A stretch of DNA of 64,000 nucleotides from Octopus bimaculoides (Eukaryota): NCBI RefSeq assembly GCF_001194135.2, contig NC_068986.1, forward strand, positions 86,311,537 through 86,375,536, given 5' to 3'. The notes beneath the pieces were generated by a model. It saw only the letters and a program-made list of their open reading frames with translations. It was not told where the DNA came from and did not search any database. The translations under genes and the position numbers were made by a program. This document shows positions 62 through 63,524 of the stretch, in pieces. Every line of letters begins with the position of its first letter. The stretch's first letter is position 1.

Positions 62-153
62 TGGTTCCATATTTTTGGCACAAGGCCAGTAATTTCGGGG
101 CCGGAGATAAGTCAATTACACAGACTCAAGGCCCCAACTTATTTTATCAACCC
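62..153 (-). mobile_element. SINE family A 3' fragment (tail type 2)
   Basis: Reverse complement reads gggttgataaaataag...gaaattactggccttgtgccaaaa, matching the 3' half of the copy at 1431-1646. Confidence 0.6.
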
Positions 154-367
154 GTTAATACGCCGGACAATAGGCTTAGCGGCATTTCGTCCGTCTCTAC
201 GTTGTGAGATCAAATCCTTCCAAGGTTGTCTTCGCCTTTCATCCTTTCGAGATCATCCTGTCGAGATCGCACTGGAATAAGTACCAGCTGAGCGCTTGCG
301 TCGATTTAATCGACTTACACACTACTCCCGAAATTGATGGCCTAGTGCCAAAAGTTGATACTAATAT
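153..367 (+). mobile_element. SINE family A, diverged, tail type 2
   Basis: gcttagcggcatttcgtccg...gcctttcatcctttcg...aataagtaccag...tcgatttaatcgactta...gatggcctagtgccaaaa. Confidence 0.7.
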
Positions 368-4300: not shown

Positions 4301-4793
4301 TCCCATGCCAAATTGCTCCTCTAAAATCCTCAAGGCGATACTCCTGCAAGGCTATACTCCTCCTATTCAATGAGTTAAAGAAATATATGTCACATATGAT
4401 TTAGACGTATATGTAAAAGAAGTATATGACACATACAAACACACGTGCACGCACGCGTGTGTGGTCACAACCGTTGGTGACGTTATTAGGCATTGTTTCC
4501 CTACATTGGCAGAGCACCAGACAACTCACATTCAGATTTATTGTTTATCATATGAAATATGCCACAAACTGGAAGGTGTAGTCGCGTAAGGGGGAACATA
4601 GTAGGGGAAGTCAGAGAACTTCATTACAGTTTTTCGTAATCTGTTATGTTTCCGTTCTGTAACAATGTAACCTTGAATCAAATGTTATAAAAATGGGTTC
4701 TTACTGTTCTTGTTTCGACGCTCTAACGTTTCATTCGTTAACGTTTTTCTTCCATTTCAAAAGTCATGAGCCTTATAGAAATATCACATTAAT

Positions 4794-5203
4794 ATTCTTT
4801 TCTACTCTATGTACAAAACCCGAAATTTGGGAGGATGTGGCCAATCGATTAGATCGACTCCAGTATAGAATTGGTACTTAATTTGTCGAACCCGAAAGGA
4901 TGAAAGGCAAACTCGATCACGGCGAAATTTGAACTCAGAACATAAAGACAGACGAAATACCACTAAGCATTTCGCCCGGCATGCTAACGTTTCTTATTTC
5001 TTTATTGCACACAAGGGGCTAAACATAGAGGGGACAAACAAGGACAGACAAAGGGATCAAATCGATTACATCGACCCCAGTGCGTAACTGGTACTTATTC
5101 AATCGACCCCGAAAGGATGAAAGGATGAAATCAGAACGTAACAGCAGACGGAATACCGATAAGTATTTCGCCCGGCGTGCTAACGATTCTGCCAGCTCGC
5201 CGC
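4794..5203 (-). mobile_element. SINE-A head-to-tail dimer (tail-1 unit followed by tail-2 unit)
   Basis: One complete head at 5203; junction ...aataaagaaataag|aaacgttagc at about 4990-4994; downstream unit ends in cctcccaaatttcgggttttgtac. Confidence 0.85.
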
Positions 5204-5240
5204 ATTCAGTTCTTATAATATTTCATTAATATTACAACTG

Positions 5241-5442
5241 AAGGTGCTGAGCTGCCAGAATCATTAGTACGCTGGTTAAGATGCTTAGCGGCGTTTAGGC
5301 CGTGTATATGTTCTGAGTCCATATTCTGCCTTTCTTCATTTTGGGGTTGATAAAATAAGCTCCATTTATGCACTTCAGTCATTGTAACCGACTTTCTCCT
5401 TTTCCCGGAATTGCTGGCCTTGTGCCAAAATGCGAAATCAAT
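5241..5442 (+). mobile_element. SINE-A, diverged, tail type 2
   Basis: gagctgccagaatcattag...ggggttgataaaataag...gaattgctggccttgtgccaaaat. Confidence 0.7.
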
Positions 5443-6010: not shown

Positions 6011-6032
6011 AACAACCATATTGATACACAAA

Positions 6033-6215
6033 ATGTTGGCTTCAAACTTTGGCACAAGGCCAGCAATTTTAGGTGAGGGCGTAAGTCATTTACATCGACC
6101 CCAGTGCTCAACTGGAACTTATCTTATCGACCCCGAAATGATGAAAAGCCAAACCGACTTCAGAACGTAAAGCTACTATGTATTTTCCCCGGTGTGCTAA
6201 CAATTCTGCCAGCCT
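6033..6215 (-). mobile_element. SINE-A, tail type 2, internally deleted
   Basis: tttggcacaaggccagcaatttt...acatcgaccccagtgctcaactgg...gctaacaattctgccagc. Confidence 0.7.
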
Positions 6216-6239
6216 GCAATCTTATTTAATACACACAAT

Positions 6240-6468
6240 TTTGGTTAATAATTTGGGACGAGACCAGCAATTTTGTGAGAGGGGGTTACATAAGTGCACT
6301 CAACTGGTACTTATTTCATGGACTGCGAAGGGGGATGAAAAGCAACGTCGAGCACGTTGGAATTTGAACTTAGAACGTTAAGACATGAAATGTCTTTACG
6401 TAAAGACAGACGGAATTCAGCTAAGCCTTTCACCCGGCGTGCTGATGATTCAGCCAACTCAACGCCTT
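6240..6468 (-). mobile_element. SINE-A, diverged
   Basis: gcactcaactggtactta...ggatgaaaag...ggaatttgaacttagaacg...cccggcgtgctgatgattcagccaactc. Confidence 0.6.
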
Positions 6469-7390
6469 TTTTTAATACGCAAAATATTGCAACCTTAAAA
6501 TTAACATGATTTAAACCTTAACCCATGCTTTACATTGAACATTAAATAATTACATATAACGAATAGAAAAACTATGCCTCCCTGCTCTCTCAGATTGAAA
6601 GCTAAAAGAAAGGAAAATGACGTGTTGACTGAATGATACATTATATAATTTGATTTATAGGAAACACCTTCTATTGTCACAAAGACATACACAAAAATTT
6701 TATTGTGAAAAATATTAACGCTGAATTGCCTGTCAAAACATTTTTGAACGTCAAGGTGAACGCATGACAGGCACATACACAATGGTAAATTTGTAATATA
6801 AATTGAATGAGCGCTATTATTGGATTAATATCATGCAAGTTATAAGAAAATGTGCAGTTACATATAAATTAATAAAGAAATATTAAAGAGAAAGAAGAAG
6901 AATTGAATGAGAAATGAGAAAGAATGAAATACATAAAATAGTAATAAGAGTGAGGAAAGTATGAAAAGAAGAGATAGAAAGTAAGAAATCATTATATTTT
7001 GTGCAAGTTTGAAATACAGTTGAGAGCGTAGGCAAAATAATGGCAAAAATGAATGAAGTTAGTTTATAAAAGATTCATTAATGATAGTCAGAGACAGAAT
7101 TATGGAAAGGAAAGAAACAAGTGGCAGATAGACAAAGATATTATTTACGAATTACAGAAATGGAGAAAAGCGTGAGCAATAAAATTGAAGTTTAAAGGGG
7201 AGACGAGTTTAAAATGAGGGGAAAGGGAAGCAAAGTAAAAGACAACGTAAGAACTGTATAGGAAAATTGAAAAGAAATACTCAACATGAGTATTTGTTCA
7301 TTGAAATGTTTAAAAAGAAATTTTTAATAATGTATGTATCTTCTTTCCTGTTATTCTCTCTCTATAGAACTACATACATGCATACATACA

Positions 7391-8844: not shown

Positions 8845-8891
<47 letters not shown>

Positions 8892-9105
8892 TTGTGTGCC
8901 TGTCTTTGTCCACCCGCCATCATTTGACAACCGATGTCGGTGTGTTTACGTCCCCGTAACTTAGCGGTTCAGCTAAGAACCCGATAGAGTAAGTACAATG
9001 CTTACAAATAATAAGTCCTGGGATCAATTTATTCGAATAAGGGCTGTGCTCCAGGATGGCCGCCGTTAAATGACTGAGACAAGTACAAGAATACAGGAAT
9101 ATATA
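8845..9105 (+). mobile_element. SINE-B 3' half starting from (GT)n
   Basis: ttgacaaccgatgtcggtgtgtttacgtccccgtaacttagcggttc...gtgctccaggatggccg..aaatgactgagacaagta. Confidence 0.8.
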
Positions 9106-9567: not shown

Positions 9568-10005
9568 ACATGGCTGCTTGCTTCCCAACCATATATTTCT
9601 GCGATCATTTCAACTGCGCGATAATTTGTGTGAGTGTCTTCTATACTGGCCTCGGGCCGACCAACCCCTTGTAAGTGGATTGCCTGACAGAAACTGAAAG
9701 AAGTCATTCGTATGTGTGTATGTGTGTATGTATGTGTGTATGTGTGCATGTGTTTGTGTCTACTTGTGTATGTGTGTATGTCTGTGTGCCTGCGTGTGCA
9801 TGCGCTTCTGCCTGTGTCTGTGCCCTACCACTTCTTGGGAAAATGTGTTGGTACATTTACGTTCCCGTAATTTAGAAGTACGCTAAAGCAGTTCCGGCTT
9901 TAAAAGAGAAGAACTGGAGTTGATCCAGTCGACTAAGTACTTCCTCAAGGTAGTGCCCCAACGTGGCAGTAGTCTAATGACTGAAACTAGTATAGAATAA
10001 AAGAT
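9568..10005 (+). mobile_element. SINE-B, diverged full length with internal (TG)n
   Basis: 5' half, about 110 nt of TG-rich microsatellite, then 3' tail gtagtctaatgactgaaactagtatagaataaaaga. Confidence 0.7.
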
Positions 10006-13071: not shown

Positions 13072-13154
<83 letters not shown>

Positions 13155-13358
13155 ATATGTTTGTGTGTCTTTGTTTGTCCCCCCAACTTGACAACCGACG
13201 CTGGTGTGTTTACGTCCCCGTAACCTAGCGGTTCGGCAAAAGAGACCGATAGAATAAGTACTAGGCTTACAAAGAATAAGTCCTGGTGTCGATTTGCCCA
13301 ACTAAAGGTGGTGCTCCAGCATAACCGCAGTCAAATGACTGAAACAGTTAAAATAGTA
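12973..13358 (+). mobile_element. SINE-B, 5'-truncated, internal (TA)n
   Basis: CORE-like gtggcaccttgggcatgtgtcttctactatagcc, then (TA)n, then tail aaaggtggtgctccagcataaccgcagtcaaatgactgaaac. Confidence 0.85.
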
Positions 13359-13952: not shown

Positions 13953-14165
13953 ATGTGCGTGCGTGTGTGCGCGTGAGTGTGTGTTTACACGCACGCGTGT
14001 GTATGAGTTTGTGATTCTTTATGTGTGTGTTTGTCCCACAATCACCAACGCTTGACCGGTGGTGTTGTGTTTGAGGCCCCATAACTTAGCAGTTCCGAAT
14101 GAAACCGATAGAATAATTACCACGATTAAAAAATAATTAAGTACTGGGGCTGATTCATGCGATTA
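13703..14165 (+). mobile_element. SINE-B spanning a small gap
   Basis: ggtaagaagcttgcttcccaaccacatg...gtagacggaaactgaaagaagcc, microsatellite, then ataacttagcagttcc..gaaaccgatagaataa. Confidence 0.75.
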
Positions 14166-19535: not shown

Positions 19536-19886
19536 AGGCGTGGGTGCGTGATAAGAAGCATGCTTCTCTACCACACGTGCAGGCCCACTGCATAGCAACT
19601 TGGGACGCTGTCGTTTATGTGGATTTGGTAGACGGAAACTAGAAAAAGTCACGTGTATGTGTGTGTGTGTGTGTGTGCTTGTCCAACAGTCACCCCTTGA
19701 CAACCGGTGTCGGTGTGTTTACCTCCGTAACTTAGGTGTTCGGCAAACGATACAGAGAGAATAAGCAGTGGGCTTTAAACAAACATACTAGGGTCAATTT
19801 GTTCGGCTAAAATCATCATAAGGCGGTACTCCAGCATGGCGACAATGGAATGATTGAAACAAATAAGAGAATAAAAGAATGCAAGA

Positions 19887-21732: not shown

Positions 21733-22610
21733 TTTATTAGTTTCAGCTGAAAGCTGTGGCCATGCTGGAGTACCGCCTTTTTTTACACTGTTATTATTGA
21801 GAGCCTTATATGTGGAATTTGGTGAGTAAGGGCGCTTAACATTGCTACTCTCTTATGCGCTTCCTTCTGCGAGGTAGATTCATCTGGGACTCTCGACAGG
21901 AAGAGATCCAGTTTTGATTTGAAAACATCTGCATCCACTCTGTGTAGGTCCCTCAGGCTCTTTTCGATAGTATTAAAAAGCTGTCGGCCACTCACACCCG
22001 GTCTGTTGCAGTAACTGGTCATGAAGCGCAACGGCATTTCTGGGATCTTTGGCACTGGAATTTGTGTAGCTTTCAATGCCAAAATTTGGCACAATCCCTT
22101 CCAGGATCTTCCAGATGTATATTACTGCATATCTCTCCCGCTTTCGCTCCAGGGAGTAGAGTTTCATCCTTTCCCAGTAACTGAGCTGTTGCAATGAAAC
22201 GATCTTCTTTGTGACGATTCGCTGAATTGCTTCAAGGTCCGCTGTTAATTTTACATTGTGGGGTGACCATAGCTGGGAGCAGTAGTCCAAGCGGCTGAGG
22301 GCCAATGTCCTCCAGTGGACCATCATGGTTTCCTTTTCTCTGGTTCTGAAGGTTCTCAGGACCCTGCCAGTCATCTGTCTGCACTTTGTCACCATCTTGG
22401 TAATGTGCACATGGAAAGTGGTGCCACCACTCATGTAGATCCTCAGGTCCCACATAGATTTAGATTCTGGGATTGTAATCTCCCGTGAGCCAGTGTATCC
22501 TGTAAGTTTTACGTTCAATTTTGGGTGCTGGTGCCGCAGGACATCGAACTTTCCAACATTAAAATGCATATTATTATACTCAGTCCATCTGTAAACTCAG
22601 CCCAACTGCA
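21733..22610 (-). mobile_element. CR1/L2-group non-LTR retrotransposon, 5'-truncated (RT C-terminus, stop codon, short 3' UTR)
   Basis: NNMHFNVGKF...VLRTFRTREKETM..WRTLALSRLDYCSQLWSP...LEAIQR...YWERMKLYSLERKRERYAVIYIWKILEGIVPN, then frameshift to FKSKLDLFLSRVPDE...; stop at 21783-21785. Confidence 0.9.
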
Positions 22611-24110: not shown

Positions 24111-24549
24111 TATCTATCTATATATCTACTTATAGAGATCGTTATATATCTCTCTCACTCACACACAGTCTCTTACACACATACACACATACACACAGAC
24201 ACACATATACACGCACATTCTGAGGAATGACGGGGTCACAGTCCTTAGTATTTGTAAATTTTGGTAAAATGGGATTGGACATTTATTAGATTTTGTATCC
24301 CTATCATATCGTTCGCACCTTTGTCATCGTAGTTTCCTATTTCATACAGGAAACAACGCTTATTGTACGTGTTATTATTGCTTCAATTCTTTCTAATGGA
24401 TGGAGGGCGGTTAAGAAAATGACTCATAATACTGTATTTGATATCTGTAGCTTCCATATCTATCCTCCCTATTTCTTCGTTCTTTTGACATCAAATAAAC
24501 AACTATAAAATATAAATTCAAAGCAAACGAAATGATACTAAAATTATCT

Positions 24550-25139
24550 TCTTCTCTAGGCCCGAAACTTCGACCCCAGTACTCAACTGGTACTTAATTT
24601 ATCGAACCCTAAAGGATGAAAGGCTAAGTAGAATTTGAACTCAGAACGTCAAGACAGACGAAATACCGCTAAGCATTTCGCTCGGAGTGCTGACGTTTCT
24701 TATTTCTTTATTGCCCACAAGGGGCCAAACACAGTGGGGATAAACAAGGACAGACAAAGGGACTAAGTCGATTACATCACGCCCAGTGCGTAACTGGTAC
24801 TTAATTTATCGACCCCGAAAGGATGAAAGGCAAAGTGGACCTCAGCGGAATTTGAACTCAGAACGCGAAGACAGACGAATTACCGCTAAGCATTTCGCCC
24901 GGCGTGCTAACGTTTCTTATTTCTTTATTGCCCACAAGGGGCTAAACATAGAGGGGACAAACACGGAATTAAGTCGATTACATCTATCCCAGTGCGTAAC
25001 TGGTACTTAATTTAACGACCCCGAAAGGATGAAAGGCAAAGTGGACCTCGGCGGAATTTGAACTCAGAACGTGACGGTAGACGAAATACCGCTAAGCATT
25101 TCGCCCGGCATGCTAACGTTTCTGCCAGCTCGCCGCCTT
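24550..25139 (-). mobile_element. SINE-A head-to-tail trimer (tail-1, tail-1, tail-2 remnant)
   Basis: Single full head at 25139; junctions tail|aaacgttagc at about 24913-24917 and tail|aaacgtcagc at about 24696-24700. Confidence 0.9.
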
Positions 25140-26367
25140 GAAATAATGCTAAAATTGTAGCACTGATGATACCGAAGATAATAGGACTGAACATATTCTC
25201 TGATCATGCATATTGAAGACGGAATTCGAACACTCTTTAGCGACTTATTGAAGGTTTTACAAAATATCTAAGACTAGTCTGGCACACGCGGTGAATTATA
25301 TCGATACGTGTTATGTATTCAGCGTGACGTGAAATGAATCTTTGAAAAGAAGAAAAGAAAGAAAAAACAGTGTTGATTGGTTGTCCAATAAATAGTCCTA
25401 ACTTCTAGGCCATCTGCTGCATTCAATTATATTACCGACAAATGTGTAGAATTCGTCCAATTGTAAATATATTTTATGAATGCAAACCAATACAGTCACA
25501 TGTGCAAAGAACAAACATCGTCAAAATAAAGATTTTAAAAATATCAACGAAATACAAGGTAACTCAGATTGAATTCTAATAACATTTTCTAAAAGTTCAT
25601 CTTAATTTTCAGTTTTTCACTCTGCTACCAAAATGTGTGCCAATCTCCAACCACAGACGTCAAATGTTGATTAATGACGAAATTCCGCCATTATGAACAT
25701 TTTTATGTGTCTGTATTTTTTAATTGTTTAGTTCCGAAATTAAAATTTTCTTTAAAAAGAAATAAATATGTTGGTATAAATTATAGAAAACTAAAACTTC
25801 AAAAAATGCTGTGTGAAGTGTCATCTGATTCATCAGTAGAGAATGAGTTTAATCGAGTACGTAACACTTAAATTTTGGTTCAAAATCTGCCTGGAATGAG
25901 ATAACACCATATCTTTTATTGCTTAACACGACATTCCGTCTCTTCATGGATTGTTTCAAGCGATTTTCATCACACATACAGTGCTTCAGTACACTATTGG
26001 CTGCTATAGATAATTCCGGGTAACTTTCGAATATACAGACTTGGAATCTTTTTATCTCTATACCTGTATATCTGCCATAAAATTCAATTTATATATTGTT
26101 ACACTCATAATGAGTGTGTGGGTGTGCGTGTGTGGGTGTGCGGGGGGGGGGGNNNNNNNNNNNNNNNNNNNNNNNNNNNNNNNNNNNNNNNNNNNNNNNN
26201 NNNNNNNNNNNNNNNNNNNNNNNNNNNNNNNNNNNNNNNNNNNNNNNNNNNNNNNNNNNNNNNNNNNNNNNNNNNNNNNNNNNNNNNNNNNNNNNNNNNN
26301 NNNNNNNNNNNNNNNNNNNNNNNNNNNNNNNNNNNNNNNNNNNNNNNNNNNNNNNNNNNNNNNNNNN

Positions 26368-30055: not shown

Positions 30056-30494
30056 TAATATCCCTTTGTATTGAGATTCCACCATTCTCATGCTTGCTAT
30101 TTCTTTATTCTAGATCTAGAATTAATACAATTAATACCAGTGGGGTACTTGGATTTATTAATCGTTTATTATTATGCGATATTCACAGCAGACCTGGATA
30201 CTTGAGACAATTACATGCACGCAACCACAAACACACACACACACACACACACACAAAAACACACACACACACACTCGCGCGCACGCGCATATTCCGTGTA
30301 TCGACGAGATTGTCGTATGTTATTACGCACAGCTGGTCGCAATTCGCTTCTCCGCATTGTTGTAGCTTTTGAATGATGTCCACCACCTCCTTAGCTCTGG
30401 GTATGGAAGCCACCATCATGCAGTTATGAGTACAACACGCTATTAAGCCATGCCTTCACACACACACACACACACACAAATACACACACATACG

Positions 30495-30555
<61 letters not shown>

Positions 30556-30558
<3 letters not shown>

Positions 30559-30786
30559 GCGAGCTGGCAGAAACGTTAGCAGGCCGGGCGAAATGCTTAA
30601 CGGTATTTCGTCTGCCGCTACGTCCTGAGTTCAAATTCCGCCGAGGTCGACTTTGCCTTTCATCCTTTCGGGGTCGATTAAATAAGTACCAGTTACGCAC
30701 TGGGGTCGATATAATCGACTTAAGCCGTTTGTCTGTCCTTGCTTGTCCCCTCTGTGTGTAGCCCCTTGTGGGTAGTAAAGAAATAA
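30556..30786 (+). mobile_element. SINE-A, full length, tail type 1, inserted in (CA)n
   Basis: ggcgagctggcagaaacgttagc...gagttcaaattccgccgaggtcgac...gtaccagttacgcactggggtcga...gccccttgtgggtagtaaagaaataa; (CA)n on both sides. Confidence 0.9.
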
Positions 30787-30937
30787 CACACACACACACA
30801 CACACACTCAAACAGATAATTCGAAAAATATTTTCATTAAAATTTATTAACTTTTATTTAATAAAATTTCACTCAGGCTTGTGGAAGACATTTATAATAA
30901 ATGTGTATTTTATGTATATTATGTATTTTGCATATGA

Positions 30938-50275: not shown

Positions 50276-51707
50276 TTTAATTCTATTTTATGTTGCTGAT
50301 ATACTCCTGATATTCTCAGTAGGCGAATGCCACCTCAGTAGGCGCATTCCCACCAGTGGAATTGGACTGGGCGTTGGAAAATAACAAATGTAAAGACAAT
50401 GAGATATTATTTCATATGCTTGAGTTTGTCAAACTGTTACTAACTTATGTATCACGTTTGTTCCTTAAATATACTGAAATACTTTCAAGAATATTTGAAG
50501 AATAAACAACTTACACCAGCATTAAGTCTACCTCCTCAACAAGATACGAACCACTATCATGTCGGTTGTTTGTTCAATGTGCTTTTAAGTTGATTATCAG
50601 CTGTGTTCCAATAAATAAAATAATTACCATAAACTATTTTGTGATTTGCTAGTAAATTTTCCAGTAGTAAAATCTATTCTTCGTAAATACTTCTCTTAAA
50701 AAAAAACTTTCATTTTTTTTTTCATTTAATCTTTCTTTTTGCATCTAGTTTATCGATCATTTGATTTTACTATTTTAGTCCTTTATTCATTTATTTATTC
50801 ATTTTTTTATTTATTTACTTCCAATTTAATTTATTTTTAATGTGGAATTGATGTTAAATGGATGAACACATAGCTGCCGTGTCCATGTACGTGTAATGAA
50901 GTGTATGAACATTTAGATGTAGTTTCTCGCTTCACTGAACAGGAAAAAACCCATAATTCTTTGCATCTGTCTCTGATGTTAAGCACATGTCCAGGTGGTA
51001 GAAGCTGTTAGTTAGTCTGGTGTGGGCCACAATTTACGTCTAAATACAATAACTTGTGGTTAGACGAGGCAATCAAAGAACTATCACCTCTCACACGCAA
51101 TATATTTGGCAACGAACAGCAGAGAAACGAAATACCCGGTGGTAATAAACCGAGGTTGTTATTGCCACGACCGTAACTGAGTTAAGTGTGTTCACATCCG
51201 ATGACAGATAACTTTACCTTTTTATCCACTTGAGTACAATTCATTAAAGACTTGTCCAAGGACTTAGTGTCAGTTGATTCTTATTTTCAGTGAACAACGC
51301 CACAGATGTAATGAATTTTCATACAACGACAAAATAATTAGAGATTCAATTCCAGTATAAGTGTAGACACAATAAAATGATAGATGTAGGAATGTCAGTC
51401 GAAGTCAAATTCAACTAAAGCTTTAGTTACTAACTAAAAGTCAATGAAATGCGAGTGTTTTAACGAAACTGTGCACTTACAGTTTGCATACATATTTCCG
51501 AGGTCTACTGGTATATATTCACAATACTTATGTTAATTAAAACCTTCTATGAAAAAATTATTACATGCCCACAGAAACTAAGGAAGAACTGAATTATCGA
51601 AAGTTCAGTTGCTGCGCTAATTTTCTAGTTAATCTGTAATTTCAACCGTAGGAATAGTTGAGACGCACATTGTTAAAATATTGTAGTTTCTCCTTTATTA
51701 TGTTTCT

Positions 51708-52157
51708 TATTTCTTTACTGTTCAAAAGGGGCTACACACAGAGGGGACAAACAAAGACAGATAAACGGATTAAGTCGATTATATCGACCCCAGTGCGTAA
51801 CTGGTACTTATTTAATCGATCTCGAAAGGATGAAAGGCAAAGTCGACCTCGGCGAAATTTGAACTCAGAACGTAGCGGCAGACGAAATACTGCTAAGCAT
51901 TTCGCCCGGCGTGCTAACGTTTCTTATTTCTTTATTGCCCACAAGGGGGCTAAACATAGAGGGGACAAACAAAGACAGACAAAGGTATTAAGTCGATTAC
52001 ATCGAGCCCAGTGCGTAACTGGTACTTAATTTATCGACCCCGAAAGGATGAAAGGCAAAGTCGACCTCGGCGGAATTTGAACTCAGAACGTAACGGCAGA
52101 CGAAATACCGCTAAGCATTTCGCCCGGCGTGCTAACGATTCTGCCAGCTCGCCGCCT
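51708..52157 (-). mobile_element. SINE-A head-to-tail dimer flanked by one 14-bp TSD
   Basis: TSD tttattatgtttct at 51694-51707 and 52158-52171; junction tail|aaacgttagc at about 51920-51924. Confidence 0.92.
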
Positions 52158-53936
52158 TTTATTATGTTTCTAGTCATTAATTCTTGGCCTGGCGGTAACA
52201 ATGCCATTGAAAAAAAAAACATATTTAGTCAATAGTTAGTATTTATACAAATACTTACTAGACTTCAATAATAAAACCGAACTTTAAAAAGATATCTTTA
52301 TGAAGTGGCAAGCTAATCGCATTGCTTCCTAAACTTAGAATCAGATGCCAATATTTTCACTATCGCCATACTCAAGATTTCAACAGGATCACATACTGTT
52401 AATTTTTGGTTGAAAAAATTATTAGACCAGTTTTGGGCCGATCAAGGAAACACAAGAAAATAAACTAATAAGAATTGAAATCACATTCTTTGACTTCTAT
52501 ATATTGCCATCGTTTTCCTCACTAAACTCTCCTTTGGTCTGTAACTAAATACCTTCTCGTATACGAAGCCTATTAAAACAGGCTGATGCCGAATTCAACA
52601 GCTGGACCTTAAAATTACTCAGAAATTGTAGAAGAATATCTACAAAAAACATCAAGTTTTAGCTATTTATTACGTCTGATCTTCCTTGTCCTGAGTCTTT
52701 TGTTATCGTGAATAAAACAGTACAGCCCGATCTGTTTGTTTTCATTGCTGATAATAAGGTATTCCAAATTGTTATCTTGAGAAACGAAAAAGACCGAGAC
52801 ATAGAAATGCTACCCCCTTATACATCTGTATTTGTATGTATGCTTTGTGTGTATGCGCTTGTTTGTGCGTGTCTGTGTGTGTGTTTGTATTAGATTGTGT
52901 GTATGCGTACTTAAGTAGAACAAGAGAGAGAGAGATTAAAAGAAAAGGAGCCTGAAAGCAAAAGTCAGAAATGTACATATGTTTACGCATGTATATGTTT
53001 CTTTAAGCACAAGCTGCATGCATAAATATACGTATGTTTGTTATAGTGTCTACCATCAACGCTCCAACGTTGAGCAGACATCCTGACACGAAACATCAAG
53101 AACATTACCATTATAACTAATGTTGATAACAACACTGAAACAAGAAGATGAAGAGCACTATTACACACTAAGAAACAAAACTGTATTAACTCTAAACAAG
53201 TTCAGTAGCACAAATATATTCATCGTAAATGGTAAATCTGAAAATAACCGGACTAAAGTTGTATTAAGTTATCATGTAACGTTTTGTTATCTTTATGGCG
53301 ATGCATTTCTTCCTAGATTTCTGTGTCATAGGCATTAAATTTTTTATAACCNNNNNNNNNNNNNNNNNNNNNNNNNNNNNNNNNNNNNNNNNNNNNNNNN
53401 NNNNNNNNNNNNNNNNNNNNNNNNNNNNNNNNNNNNNNNNNNNNNNNNNNNNNNNNNNNNNNNNNNNNNNNNNNNNNNNNNNNNNNNNNNNNNNNNNNNN
53501 NNNNNNNNNNNNNNNNNNNNNNNNNNNNNNNNNNNNNNNNNNNNNNNNNNNNNNNNNNNNNNNNNNNNNNNNNNNNNNNNNNNNNNNNNNNNNNNNNNNN
53601 NNNNNNNNNNNNNNNNNNNNNNNNNNNNNNNNNNNNNNNNNNNNNNNNNNNNNNNNNNNNNNNNNNNNNNNNNNNNNNNNNNNNNNNNNNNNNNNNNNNN
53701 NNNNNNNNNNNNNNNNNNNNNNNNNNNNNNNNNNNNNNNNNNNNNNNNNNNNNNNNNNNNNNNNNNNNNNNNNNNNNNNNNNNNNNNNNNNNNNNNNNNN
53801 NNNNNNNNNNNNNNNNNNNNNNNNNNNNNNNNNNNNNNNNNNNNNNNNNNNNNNNNNNNNNNNNNNNNNNNNNNNNNNNNNNNNNNNNNNNNNNNNNNNN
53901 NNNNNNNNNNNNNNNNNNNNNNNNNNNNNNNNNNNN

Positions 53937-58032: not shown

Positions 58033-59403
58033 TATTATTATTCCTTCGCAACACAGTGTAGGTAAAAATGCACCGGAATTTTTAGTCATCTGTCAAGTCA
58101 CCACAAGGACCTCAGATAGATAATACTTTCCTTAAGATGTGCGCTGTGCCCAATAAAGCTGCATTTTGCAAAACATCAATCTTATTTCTTTATTGCCCAC
58201 AAGGGGCTAAACATAGAGGGGACAAACAAGGACAGACAAACGGATTAAGTCGATTATATCGACCCCAGTGCGTAACTGGTACTTATTTAATCGACCCCGA
58301 AAGGATGAAAGGCAATGTCGACCTCGGCGGAATTTGAACTCAGAACGTAGTGGCAGACGAAATCCCGCTAAGCATTTCGCCCGGTGTGCTAACGTTTCTG
58401 CTCGCCGCCTTCAAAACATCAATTTTGCATGGGATTTACACTTGCCTTAAGAAGTTTTGAAGTTTCAATGGAAATGAGCCCAACGTTCCGGTCACCACTG
58501 GCACCACTTTTACATTACCCTCTCACATTCTATAGTCTTGCCATTTCCACTTTCAATTCGGAGTACTTGGTGACTTTTTTCAGCCTCTTTACTCATAACA
58601 TTCATGTCATTTGGTATGGCTACATCAATTATCTGACAGTATTTGTTTCTCTATTCAATATGATAATATCCGGCCGACGGAGTTCGATTACAAGATCCGC
58701 CTGAAAATCATAGTCCCTGGGTATTGTTACTTTTCCATCCTCCTGCATAACTTCAATTGGTACATGTTTATACCAGTTCTTTGCTACTTCATTTTGGTGT
58801 TTACGGCATAAGAAATACGCAAACAGTTTATTGTGACGGCGCTTGTATTCTTTTTGTGCAAGACTCTCACATCTACTTACTAAGTGGGTCTCATTTTCCA
58901 CACTCTTTCCAAAGAGCCTGCATTTCTGGATGTCAGAAGATTTATACATGTTATACTTCACTGAATTGGTAGCGAGAGCCTGGTCTTGTGCAGCAATCAT
59001 CAGGCTTTCGGTGGTACGCTTCAAATCACCTCGCTCAAGCCATGCCCACGGTGATGTATTATCCTTCAAGTCTTGCGTATTCCTTTCAAACTGTTCATGC
59101 ATTCTTATTTCAAGAAGGTCTTTTCTCCTCAGCTCTTTGGTTAAACTCTTCCTTGCCCATCATTTCTTCTGCATTTACATCCATATCTTTCGTGGCATAT
59201 TGCAGCAGGTCATCATCACTATTTATCAAATATTCGGCAAGCGTTCTCCTTTCACTCCTTATACAATGGTCTATACTAATTAGTCCTCTGTCACCATTCT
59301 TTTTTTTTTTTTTCATGAACAGGCTATTTACGTTTGCTTTAATGTGTAGCACCACATGCAGCGTCATCAACTTACTCGTCATTTTATCCAGTGTTGATAT
59401 TTC

Positions 59404-63099: not shown

Positions 63100-63524
63100 A
63101 TATTCTTTTATTCATTTACTCTTTTACATGCTTCAGTCATTTTGACTGCGGCCATGCCGGAGCACGATATTTAGTCGAGCGAATCGACAACAGAACTTTT
63201 TCTTTCTAAGCCTAGTACTTATTCTATCGATCTCTTTTGACGAACCGCTTATCTACGGGTACGTAAACACTTCAGCATCGGTTGTCAAGTGATGTTGGAG
63301 GGACAAGCACAGACAGACAAACATATACACTCATATATATACATATACACTCATATATACATACATATACAACGGGCTTCTTTCAGTTTCCGTCTAACAA
63401 ATCTACTCATAAAGCTTTGGTCGGCCCTAGGCTATAGTCGATGACACTTGCCGGAGGAGCTACGCAGTGGAATCGAACCCGGAACCATGTGGTTGGTAAG
63501 CAATTACTTACCACACAGCCACTC
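63100..63524 (-). mobile_element. SINE-B, full length (best copy in the window)
   Basis: Minus strand gagtggctgtgtggtaag (A box), ccgggttcgattcc (B box), CORE-like ggcaagtgtc.tcgactatagcc, short internal TA/TG tract, tail gtgctccggcatggccgcagtcaaaatgactgaagc. Confidence 0.88.

What the first reader, a model, noticed from the sequence alone, without database searches (positions are those of the whole stretch)
51694..52171. Head-to-tail SINE-A arrays with one invariant junction: a SINE that may target its own A-box
Seen: three separate arrays (4794-5203, 24550-25139, 51708-52157) contain four junctions at the same position. Each joins the end of tail-1 (...aataaagaaataag) to position about +15 of the next head (aaacgttagc; once aaacgtcagc). 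Each array has only one complete head. Every upstream unit has tail-1, while the terminal unit has tail-2 or a tail-2 remnant in two of the three arrays. At 5185 and 52137 the lead head reads aaTcgttagc but the junction reads aaAcgttagc. The 52-kb dimer has one outer 14-bp TSD whose minus-strand reading also begins agaaac. Inference: tail-1 copies insert preferentially at AG^AAAC inside the A-box of existing SINE-A copies, and the cDNA anneals to the identical upstream head, giving a seamless 5' join. This would be a self-seeding SINE-to-tandem-array mechanism. Established: many Tx1-clade LINEs are sequence-specific for small RNA genes or repeats.
Basis: partly seen in the sequence, partly recalled or inferred. 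Interest (0 to 1): 0.75.

Follow-up and report, generated by a model that had tools for sequence, protein, structure and literature searches.

The report
SINE copies nested head-to-tail
Three short head-to-tail arrays of one SINE family all join the exact 3' end of one unit to the same base inside the promoter region of the next, which points to reverse transcription primed at one preferred site, but one 64-kb window cannot show that the SINE targets its own head.

Summary
SINE-A lies on the minus strand in three arrays (5204-4797, 25137-24546, 52156-51706). They contain four junctions, all reading ...GAAATAAG|AAACGT(T/C)AGC: the exact retrotransposition 3' end of tail-1 joined to head position 17 (counted from GGCGGCG), with AG shared.

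New findings:
- Each whole array is flanked by one target-site duplication.
- Units within an array are not each other's closest relatives, which excludes simple tandem duplication and rolling-circle copying.
- The downstream units are three unrelated elements, so the junction arose at least two or three times.
- Four of six tail-1 3' ends abut AAAC, including one in unique DNA.
- The middle unit of the trimer is a mosaic, best explained by unequal crossover rather than a second targeted insertion.

Best reading (about 0.45): reverse transcription of a tail-1 copy was primed at AG^AAAC inside an existing SINE-A head, and homology resolved the 5' join.

Not excluded: one founder junction spread by descent, or template switching during a single insertion.

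If the reading is true, this is a new variant of known target-preferring SINE/LINE behaviour.

The parts
52158..52171 (-). Upstream copy of the outer TSD of array A3 (AGAAACATAATAAA on the minus strand)
   Evidence: Local alignment of the flanks, 14/14 identical; sequence read.
51923..52156 (-). A3 lead unit: complete head (GGCGGCGAGCTGGCAGAATCG...), core, and tail-1 ending ...AATAAAGAAATAAG at 51923
   Evidence: It shows 0.7% deviation at shared-consensus columns. Its closest relative is the A2 lead unit at 95%, not its own neighbour.
51706..51922 (-). A3 terminal unit: starts at head position 17 (AAACGTTAGC) and has a tail-1 variant (...TTTTGAACAGTAAAGAAATAAG). It belongs to the derived lineage '1a' shared with the two monomers.
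   Evidence: It is closest to monomers 30556-30786 and 58181-58411, at 95%.
51694..51707 (-). Downstream copy of the A3 outer TSD. Its first two bases (AG) overlap the last two bases of the tail.
4993..5204 (-). A1 lead unit: complete head with AATCG, a 22-bp internal deletion, and tail-1 ending at 4993
4797..4992 (-). A1 terminal unit: starts AAACGTTAGC, has a T2-type core (CTGTCTT) and tail-2 (...AGAGTAGAAAAG)
4772..4796 (-). A1 outer TSD, downstream copy (AATATTAATGTGATATTTCTATAAG). The upstream copy is at 5212-5233 and lies 7 nt from the head.
   Evidence: Local alignment gives 22-25 bp with 2 mismatches and one 3-nt indel; 12 of 500 shuffles reach that score.
24916..25137 (-). A2 lead unit: complete head with AAACG, a 12-bp deletion in the tail, and tail-1 ending at 24916
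24699..24915 (-). A2 middle unit: starts AAACGTTAGC. It is a mosaic, with T2-type GTCTT in its 5' part (as in A2 terminal) and a private GGTCCAC variant shared only with A2 lead. Tail-1 ends at 24699.
24546..24698 (-). A2 terminal unit: starts AAACGTCAGC, has a T2-type core with two deletions and a tail-2 remnant (...CTAGAGAAGAAGAT)
24529..24545 (-). A2 outer TSD, downstream copy (AATTTTAGTATCATTTC). The upstream copy is at 25140-25156.
   Evidence: 15 of 17 identical, directly abutting both ends of the array.
58181..58411 (-). Stand-alone tail-1 monomer with 12-bp TSD ATTGATGTTTTG. It defines the true 3' terminus of tail-1 (...ATAAG).
30556..30786 (+). Stand-alone tail-1 monomer inserted in a (CA)n run

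Best explanation
Each array is a composite made by retrotransposition. An older SINE-A copy, with its own TSD, already sat at the locus. Later a tail-1 SINE-A RNA was reverse-transcribed from a DNA 3' end created at AG^AAAC, between positions 16 and 17 of that copy's head, inside the box-A-like motif TGGCAGAAACG.

The target strand carries about 14 nt of head sequence identical to the new cDNA. Second-strand priming therefore occurs by homology, and the hidden TSD merges with the head. The product is: one complete head, the new unit with its full tail-1, then the old unit from position 17 onward.

What is shown:
- the junction sits at the true tail-1 terminus;
- the units are of different lineages;
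- one outer TSD flanks each array;
- tail-1 ends are enriched next to AAAC.

What is inferred: the order of events, endonuclease preference as the cause, and the homology-mediated 5' join.

Arrays can then lengthen by ordinary unequal crossover, as in the 24.5-kb trimer. A plausible reinforcing step, not tested, follows from the lack of any Pol III terminator in lead or internal units. Transcripts from an array read through the junction and carry head sequence 3' of tail-1. That sequence could anneal to nicked heads elsewhere, as is proposed for target-cotranscribed R2-type elements.
For: (1) Exact terminus. Tail-1 ends at ...ATAAG in a monomer with a clean 12-bp TSD and at all four junctions. 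SINE-A has no internal T4 terminator. The 3' boundary is therefore set by specific RT initiation, not by an RNA end or a DNA breakpoint.

(2) Units in one array are not nearest relatives. A3 lead versus A3 terminal is 91-93%, A3 lead versus A2 lead is 95%, and A3 terminal versus the monomers is 95%.

(3) The three downstream units are unrelated. Two are T2-type and share only one exclusive derived site out of 21-22 deviations; the third is lineage 1a. The junction therefore formed more than once.

(4) Target bias. Four of six tail-1 3' ends abut AAAC (window frequency 0.0061; p = 2e-8, or 2e-4 in the most conservative count). This includes the A3 TSD AGAAAC in unique DNA.

(5) Junctions always carry the A allele, while complete T2/T3 heads mostly carry AATC.

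(6) Terminal units are more diverged than upstream units: 10.3 vs 6.9%, 11.8 vs 5.1 and 5.9%, and 2.9 vs 0.7% (pooled Fisher p = 0.027).

(7) One outer TSD flanks each array. This excludes insertion of the downstream unit behind a pre-existing upstream unit.

(8) Precedent. The target-preferring SINEU-3 with Tx1-Mar forms tandem insertions by sequential insertion at one site (PMC4494074).
Against: - Only three arrays in one window.
- In A1, lead and terminal units are equally diverged at non-CpG sites (8.5 vs 9.2%).
- Upstream-unit divergence, terminal-unit divergence and TSD decay rise together across the arrays (A3 < A2 < A1). That is also what co-insertion predicts.
- TSD mismatch counts fit the younger age slightly better, with a rough likelihood ratio of 1.4-4 (my calculation).
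- All upstream units are the ancestral tail-1 type and all stand-alone copies are the derived 1a type (Fisher p = 0.03-0.1). Their tail ends are identical, so an endonuclease-only model does not explain this split.
- Two of three stand-alone insertions are at sites unrelated to AGAAAC.
- Heads are hit far more often than the 61 other AGAAAC sites, so the hexamer cannot be the whole signal.
- Lead heads read T where the hidden-TSD model in its simplest form predicts A. This needs heteroduplex resolution.
- No partner LINE with tail-1 is present in the window.
- No read support or empty-site evidence could be obtained.
Confidence: 0.45

Rival explanations
1. Founder junction spread by descent. 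The tail-1-to-position-17 junction formed once or very few times. It then spread either because dimers are transcribed from the lead head and retrotransposed as a unit (Alu-like masters), or because array-derived RNA, cDNA or DNA recombined with SINE-A copies elsewhere by gene conversion or homology-primed reverse transcription. In either case the junction is carried along.
For: - Invariance is automatic under this model.
- One outer TSD flanks each array.
- No T4 terminator lies inside lead or internal units, so dimer-length Pol III transcripts are expected.
- The lead-T / junction-A pattern recurs in A1 and A3.
- All upstream units are of the non-1a tail-1 type.
- Unit divergence and TSD decay co-vary across arrays.
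- A1 lead and terminal units are equally diverged at non-CpG sites.
Against: - The downstream units are three unrelated elements. A1 terminal and A2 terminal share one exclusive site, and A3 terminal is lineage 1a. At least two or three masters or recombination events are therefore needed.
- Upstream units share no derived character of their own. They are the ancestral tail-1 grade, not a clade.
- The terminal unit of A2 is significantly more diverged than its upstream units (p = 0.04).
- In all arrays the switch between lineages lies within about 45 nt of the junction. A recombination model would predict scattered breakpoints.
- It does not explain why the A3 genomic TSD also begins AGAAAC.
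Confidence: 0.25
2. Single-event template switch. During target-primed reverse transcription of the downstream unit's RNA, the nascent cDNA reached head position 17. It was then used as primer on a tail-1 SINE RNA, giving a chimera inserted in one step with one TSD. This is analogous to U6-L1 chimeric retrocopies.
For: - One outer TSD per array.
- The upstream partner is always complete to its 3' end and the downstream partner is 5'-truncated, which is the architecture of known template-switch chimeras (established knowledge: Buzdin et al. 2002; Bibillo and Eickbush 2002-2004).
- Age indicators for A1 and A3 are compatible with co-insertion.
Against: - No 5'-truncated monomer starting at position 17 occurs among about 19 other SINE-A copies.
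- The acceptor boundary is the internal RT-initiation site, not an RNA 3' end, because transcripts read through.
- In A1 and A2 the donor has tail-2, so machinery acting on tail-2 would have to hand over to tail-1-specific initiation.
- The A allele at all junctions is unexplained.
- The mosaic A2 middle unit is unexplained.
- The A2 terminal unit is older-looking than its partners.
Confidence: 0.15
3. DNA-level origin, or an artefact. The arrays would be local tandem duplications or unequal crossovers within one SINE insertion, as in bivalve TSD1-(SINE)n-TSD1 arrays or squamate SINE-derived satellites. Alternatively they would be mis-assemblies of a gap-rich short-read scaffold.
For: - Unequal crossover does explain the third unit of A2.
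- A different tandem pair at 6036-6467 has the TSD-SINE-TSD-SINE-TSD form.
- The window has 19 N gaps.
- Such arrays are described in PMC11481361 and PMC10702118.
Against: - Units in one array carry different tails and lineages and are not nearest relatives.
- The breakpoint coincides to the base with the retrotransposition terminus in three loci. A random duplication breakpoint would not.
- In the bivalve arrays the internal units are truncated at both head and tail, unlike here.
- An assembler cannot invent a non-homologous tail-to-head join, and each array has matching TSDs in unique flanks.
Confidence: 0.05

Closest known systems
SINEU-3 with Tx1-Mar in crocodilians (Kojima 2015, PMC4494074)
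   Same: A SINE shares the target preference of its LINE partner and hits one site in another repeat family. Tandem SINE copies arise by sequential insertion at the regenerated target.
   Different: There the target is a Mariner DNA transposon, the TSD is visible between the units, and about 90% of copies are on target. Here the target would be the SINE's own family head, the TSD would be hidden in the homology, only about half of tail-1 ends are on target, and no partner LINE is identified.
SINE-derived satellites (sSats) of squamates (Vassetzky et al. 2023, PMC10702118)
   Same: Head-to-tail repeats of part of a SINE, with one longer terminal unit reaching the SINE terminus. The same unit boundaries recur at several loci.
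   Different: sSat units are internal SINE segments, are homogeneous within loci, and can reach hundreds of copies. Here there are 2-3 units of different lineages, and the unit's 3' boundary is the true retrotransposition terminus.
TSD1-(SINE)n-TSD1 arrays in the bivalve Scapharca broughtonii (PMC11481361)
   Same: One outer TSD, a complete head only on the first unit, and the same head truncation in all later units.
   Different: There the first and internal units also have truncated 3' tails, as expected for an internal tandem duplication. Here the upstream units have complete tails and differ in lineage from the terminal unit.
Head-to-tail B2, Dip, B1 and Alu multimers in mammals (PMC8466645)
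   Same: A new SINE integrates into a preferred site provided by an older SINE, giving dimers to octamers. Those authors also could not separate nested insertion from dimeric masters.
   Different: In mammals the target is the A-rich tail (L1 endonuclease TT/AAAA, established knowledge) and the units stay full-length. Here the site is inside the head, and the downstream unit loses its first 16 nt.
Template-switch chimeric retrocopies (U6-L1 and similar) and dimeric SINEs such as Alu and Twin
   Same: A complete upstream RNA copy is fused to a 5'-truncated downstream copy within one TSD. Dimers can amplify as a unit.
   Different: Chimera breakpoints in the downstream partner are variable, and dimeric SINE families have fixed composition. 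Here the breakpoint is invariant and the composition varies.

Membership tests
tRNA-derived SINE (SINE2) | Head with Pol III box A and box B and recognisable tRNA similarity | tested here: inconclusive
   By eye, TGGCAGAAACG (positions 11-21) resembles box A (TRGCNNAGTGG) and GAGTTCAAATTCC resembles box B. ARAGORN finds no tRNA and Rfam finds no match at E <= 1. The MFE fold of the head is a long hairpin closed by GGCGG/CCGCC, not a cloverleaf.
tRNA-derived SINE (SINE2) | Short, dispersed, many diverged copies with variable TSDs and family-specific 3' tails | tested here: met
   There are 26 nhmmer matches in 64 kb on both strands. TSDs of 12, 14, 17 and 22-25 bp were found. There are three tail types.
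Target-specific retrotransposon or SINE (Tx1-clade-like, SINEU-3-like) | Most copies inserted at one defined sequence, in one orientation | tested here: inconclusive
   Four of seven tail-1 ends lie at head position 16/17 (three or four independent events), and one of three others lies at AGAAAC in unique DNA. Two lie at unrelated sites. The sample is too small.
Target-specific retrotransposon or SINE (Tx1-clade-like, SINEU-3-like) | A partner LINE shares the 3' tail and the same target | tested here: not met
   No tail-1-like sequence exists outside SINE-A copies in the window. The RT fragments at 21973-22569 and 58629-59102 are not linked to tail-1. The genome outside the window could not be searched.
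Dimeric SINE family (Alu-like master) | Fixed two-unit composition amplified as one element with one TSD | tested here: not met
   One TSD per array is met. Composition is not fixed: the downstream units are two unrelated T2-type elements and one tail-1 element.
SINE-derived satellite or internal tandem duplication | Units within a locus derive from one another (near-identical at origin, same lineage) | tested here: not met
   Units within an array are 77-93% identical and are closer to units elsewhere. The exception is the A2 middle unit, which is a recombinant of its two neighbours.
Template-switch chimeric retrocopy | Complete 5' partner, 5'-truncated 3' partner with variable breakpoint, and a single TSD | tested here: inconclusive
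   The architecture and the single TSD are met. The breakpoint is invariant rather than variable.

The most novel reading that the evidence does not exclude
A SINE lineage that homes to its own family's promoter. The machinery acting on tail-1 nicks AG^AAAC in box A of resident SINE-A copies. Array-borne source copies make read-through RNAs whose 3' extension is head sequence, and this guides priming to other heads. The 5' end is healed by homology. The process would copy the junction faithfully, silence the invaded unit's promoter, and seed tandem arrays that unequal crossover then extends. That would give a direct retrotransposition route from a SINE to a proto-satellite.
Probability: 0.3. 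Interest if true: 0.7.

Novelty: new variant of a known kind. Interest (0 to 1): 0.5.

Why it matters
How dispersed SINEs turn into tandem repeats is poorly documented. [quoted passage not shown]

A junction that coincides to the base with the reverse-transcription start site, recurring at independent loci, would show that the first duplication can be made by retrotransposition into a preferred site within the SINE itself. Recombination would not then be needed for that first step.

It would also be a case of a SINE disabling the Pol III promoter of older relatives, because internal units lose half of box A.

Finally, it gives a simple handle on the target preference of an unidentified invertebrate LINE: AG^AAAC, with the A versus T allele at head position 19 as a natural test.

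Tried and rejected
**Read and run evidence.** There is therefore no long-read, RNA or polymorphism check.

**Sampling more copies from the genome.**
- The antisense frame through SINE-A is open, so I searched it as a protein. There were no hits.
- The RT-like ORF gave only 35-59% relatives on unrelated metagenome contigs, plus one Octopus protein at 44%. No same-genome loci could be fetched.
- A two-block SINE-A core pattern matches 7 copies in the window. It matches nothing in the metagenome, prokaryotic-genome or viral collections.
- A full-text search for SINE-A sequence strings found nothing relevant.

**Organism.** It was not established. An octopus-like origin is only my recollection plus the 44% hit.

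**Models rejected.**
- Rolling-circle or circular-RNA copying, and simple tandem duplication, because the units differ in lineage and tail.
- Recombination at the AGAAA shared by tail and head, because it would delete TAAG, which is present.
- Insertion of the downstream unit behind a pre-existing upstream unit, because the TSDs pair the outermost flanks.
- AAAC being part of tail-1, because the monomers lack it.

**Tests that gave no discrimination.**
- TSD decay is too short to use as a clock.
- The 1a / non-1a lineage split turned out to be a derived clade against an ancestral grade, so it is weak evidence for descent.
- A Pfam scan of five TE-like ORFs returned nothing.
Full report
**1. 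What is there**

A blastn search with one full unit and an nhmmer search with a 13-unit profile find 26 copies in the 64-kb window.

The copies share a head and core of about 170 nt. The head begins (AA)GGCGGCGAGCTGGCAGAA(A/T)CGTTAGC. They carry at least three different 3' tails.

Tail-1 (...CCCCTTGTGGGCAATAAAGAAATAAG) occurs seven times. Two tail-1 copies are stand-alone monomers:
- 58411-58181(-) has a clean 12-bp TSD, ATTGATGTTTTG, starting directly after ...ATAAG.
- 30556-30786(+) lies in a (CA)n run.

These monomers fix the true 3' terminus of tail-1.

**2.

Four tail-1 ends are followed directly by AAACGT(T/C)AGC, which is head position 17 onward counted from GGCGGCG. The AG at positions 15-16 is shared with the tail end. 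An 18-mer spanning the junction occurs four times, against 0.06 expected.

The arrays are:
- A1: 5204-4797, tail-1 unit plus tail-2 unit.
- A2: 25137-24546, tail-1 unit, tail-1 unit, then a tail-2 remnant.
- A3: 52156-51706, tail-1 unit plus a tail-1-variant unit.

Each array has one complete head. The lead heads of A1 and A3 read AATCG, while all junctions read AAACG. No N gap interrupts an array.

**3. New facts from the window**

(a) All three arrays, not only A3, are bracketed by one direct repeat that abuts the outermost ends. A1 has 22-25 bp with two mismatches and one indel, A2 has 15 of 17, and A3 has 14 of 14. The downstream unit therefore did not insert behind an existing upstream unit. 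Either the whole array arrived at once, or the TSD belongs to the terminal element and that element's head was later invaded.

(b) Units in one array are not each other's nearest relatives. A3 lead is closest to A2 lead (95%). A3 terminal is closest to the two monomers (95%). A1 and A2 terminal units are T2-type and only 77-85% identical to anything. Simple tandem duplication and rolling-circle copying are excluded for the founding junctions.

(c) The three downstream units are unrelated elements. A1 terminal and A2 terminal share one exclusive derived site among 21-22 deviations each. A3 terminal carries the derived states of lineage 1a. The same junction has therefore been formed, or transferred, at least two to three times.

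(d) The A2 middle unit is a mosaic. It has the T2-type GTCTT signature of its downstream neighbour in its 5' part. It also has a private GGTCCAC variant shared only with its upstream neighbour. This is the product expected from one unequal crossover between misaligned dimers. The only array longer than a dimer thus grew by ordinary recombination, and the window holds three, not four, independent junction events.

(e) Tail-1 ends are joined to AAAC in four of six events. AAAC has a frequency of 0.0061 per position in the window, giving p about 2e-8. If the three head junctions are counted as one inherited event, two of four gives p about 2e-4. The A3 TSD in unique DNA begins AGAAAC, a hexamer with frequency 0.00058.

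(f) Seven of nine complete T2/T3-type heads carry T at position 19. Both T2-type downstream units nevertheless carry A at the junction.

(g) At columns where the tail-1 and tail-2 consensus agree, terminal units deviate more than upstream units: 10.3 vs 6.9%, 11.8 vs 5.1 and 5.9%, and 2.9 vs 0.7% (pooled p = 0.027). At non-CpG columns the difference disappears in A1 (9.2 vs 8.5%) and persists in A2 (10.6 vs 3.7 and 4.6%).

(h) No run of four or more T occurs in the sense strand of any lead or internal unit. Pol III transcripts starting in a lead head must therefore read through the junction. The sharp 3' boundary of tail-1 must be set by specific initiation of reverse transcription.

**4. Mechanism**

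The upstream side of every junction is the exact RT start site. The junction was therefore made by reverse transcription primed from a DNA 3' end complementary to AAACG....

It could also have been a nascent cDNA (template switch).

Nested insertion needs only standard target-primed reverse transcription. With the 12-17-bp stagger seen for this family, the top-strand 3' end would be old head 17-30. This matches the new cDNA perfectly and would prime second-strand synthesis there. The result would be the seamless single head that is observed.

The model explains facts (c), (e), (f) and (g). For A1 and A2, a template switch would need tail-2 machinery to hand a cDNA to tail-1-specific initiation. 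It also predicts position-17-truncated monomers, and none are seen among about 19 other copies.

A founder-junction model is favoured by four things: automatic invariance, the read-through transcripts in (h), the recurring lead-T / junction-A pattern, and the fact that all upstream units are non-1a while all stand-alone copies are 1a (p = 0.03-0.1). In that model dimer masters, or cDNA or gene conversion, carry the junction. However, the non-1a units share no derived character; they are an ancestral grade. The model also needs several masters or recombinations because of (c).

My estimates are:
- nested insertion at a preferred site: about 0.45;
- spread by descent: 0.25;
- template switch: 0.15;
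- DNA-level origin or artefact: 0.05;
- the remainder unassigned.

A hybrid is attractive. Read-through RNA from an array carries head sequence 3' of tail-1 and could guide priming to other heads, as is proposed for elements cotranscribed with their target (cited in PMC4494074). This is untested.

**5. Limits of the specificity claim**

Two of three stand-alone tail-1 insertions are at sequences unrelated to AGAAAC.

The window has 67 AGAAAC sites. Six of them are the head/junction form AGAAACGTTAGC: three of the four junctions plus three complete heads. The fourth junction reads AGAAACGTCAGC. The three independent junction events therefore fall in this tiny class, whereas only one of the 61 other AGAAAC sites received an insertion.

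A hexamer preference alone cannot produce that bias. A longer recognition sequence, homology-assisted completion, or RNA-guided priming is needed. No LINE with a tail-1 3' end is in the window, so the Tx1-clade idea is untested.

**6. Comparison with known systems**

- Target-preferring SINEs that form tandem insertions by sequential insertion are known. SINEU-3 with Tx1-Mar is one, but its target is a Mariner element and a visible TSD lies between units.
- Head-to-tail SINE multimers are common in rodents and bats through insertion into A-rich tails. Their authors likewise could not separate nested insertion from dimeric masters.
- SINE-derived satellites in squamates and TSD1-(SINE)n-TSD1 arrays in a bivalve share the single outer TSD and the single complete head. 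Their units are internal segments truncated at both ends and derive from one another.

The distinguishing feature here is a junction at the true 3' terminus, joined to one fixed base inside the head, between units of different lineages. I rate this a new variant of a known kind, provided the nested-insertion reading holds.

**7. What could not be done**

No further sequence from this genome was reachable.
- SINE-A translated in its open antisense frame has no match in the protein collection.
- The RT-like ORF has only distant relatives.
- The SINE-A core is absent from the metagenome, prokaryote and viral collections.

The organism is not established. All statistics rest on three arrays and two monomers, and they are fragile.

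**8. Verdict**

The self-seeding array-growth part is contradicted by the one trimer available. Interest is 0.5. The census described under next steps would settle the question quickly.

Noticed in passing
window 6018-6490 (minus strand): This is a second, different kind of SINE-A tandem pair. Two full-headed units carry a third tail type, and three copies of one ~18-22-bp direct repeat (CAAyATTkTGyGTATyAA) separate and flank them, giving TSD-SINE-TSD-SINE-TSD. The units are about 80% alike and the repeats 78-83% alike. That fits an old duplication of SINE plus TSD by unequal crossover, or re-insertion at the same target.
   Followed up: partly
window 153-363, 1432-1650, 5244-5442, 6039-6217, 6298-6465: SINE-A has a third tail type (...AAAATTGCTGGCCTTGTGCCAAAATTTGAAATCAATATT), besides tail-1 and tail-2 (...AGAGTAGAAAGGAAT). 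The family may therefore use several LINE partners.
   Followed up: partly
window 8881-9080(-), 9794-9987(-), 13150-13345(-), 14010-14155(-), 19653-19860(-), 63132-63330(+): An unrelated ~196-bp SINE-like family ends in microsatellite. Its 3' part (GGGGACAAACAAAGACA...) matches the antisense of SINE-A tail-1 over 28 nt at 89%. This may be chance or a shared module in the opposite orientation.
   Followed up: partly
window 21973-22569(-) and 58629-59102(-): These ORFs look like fragments of reverse-transcriptase-bearing elements. For the first ORF, 56 relatives were found and several carry PF00078; the best named hit is an Octopus 'jockey-like' RT at 44% identity. A Pfam scan of both ORFs themselves is empty; the second ORF was not searched for relatives and is RT-like by motif only. 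The tail-1 monomer at 58181-58411 sits about 220 bp 3' of the second ORF, with its own TSD.
   Followed up: partly
window, whole: The window has 19 runs of N (10-957 bp) and is very rich in microsatellites (46 TRF rows). Base composition is 29% A, 29% T and about 16% each of C and G, with N making up the rest. This is typical of a short-read scaffold of a repeat-rich animal genome.
   Followed up: no
window 51658-52029(+) and 30443-30811(-): The antisense strand of SINE-A is an open reading frame across a whole unit (122-123 aa ORFs). It has no relatives in the protein collection and is most likely fortuitous.
   Followed up: yes
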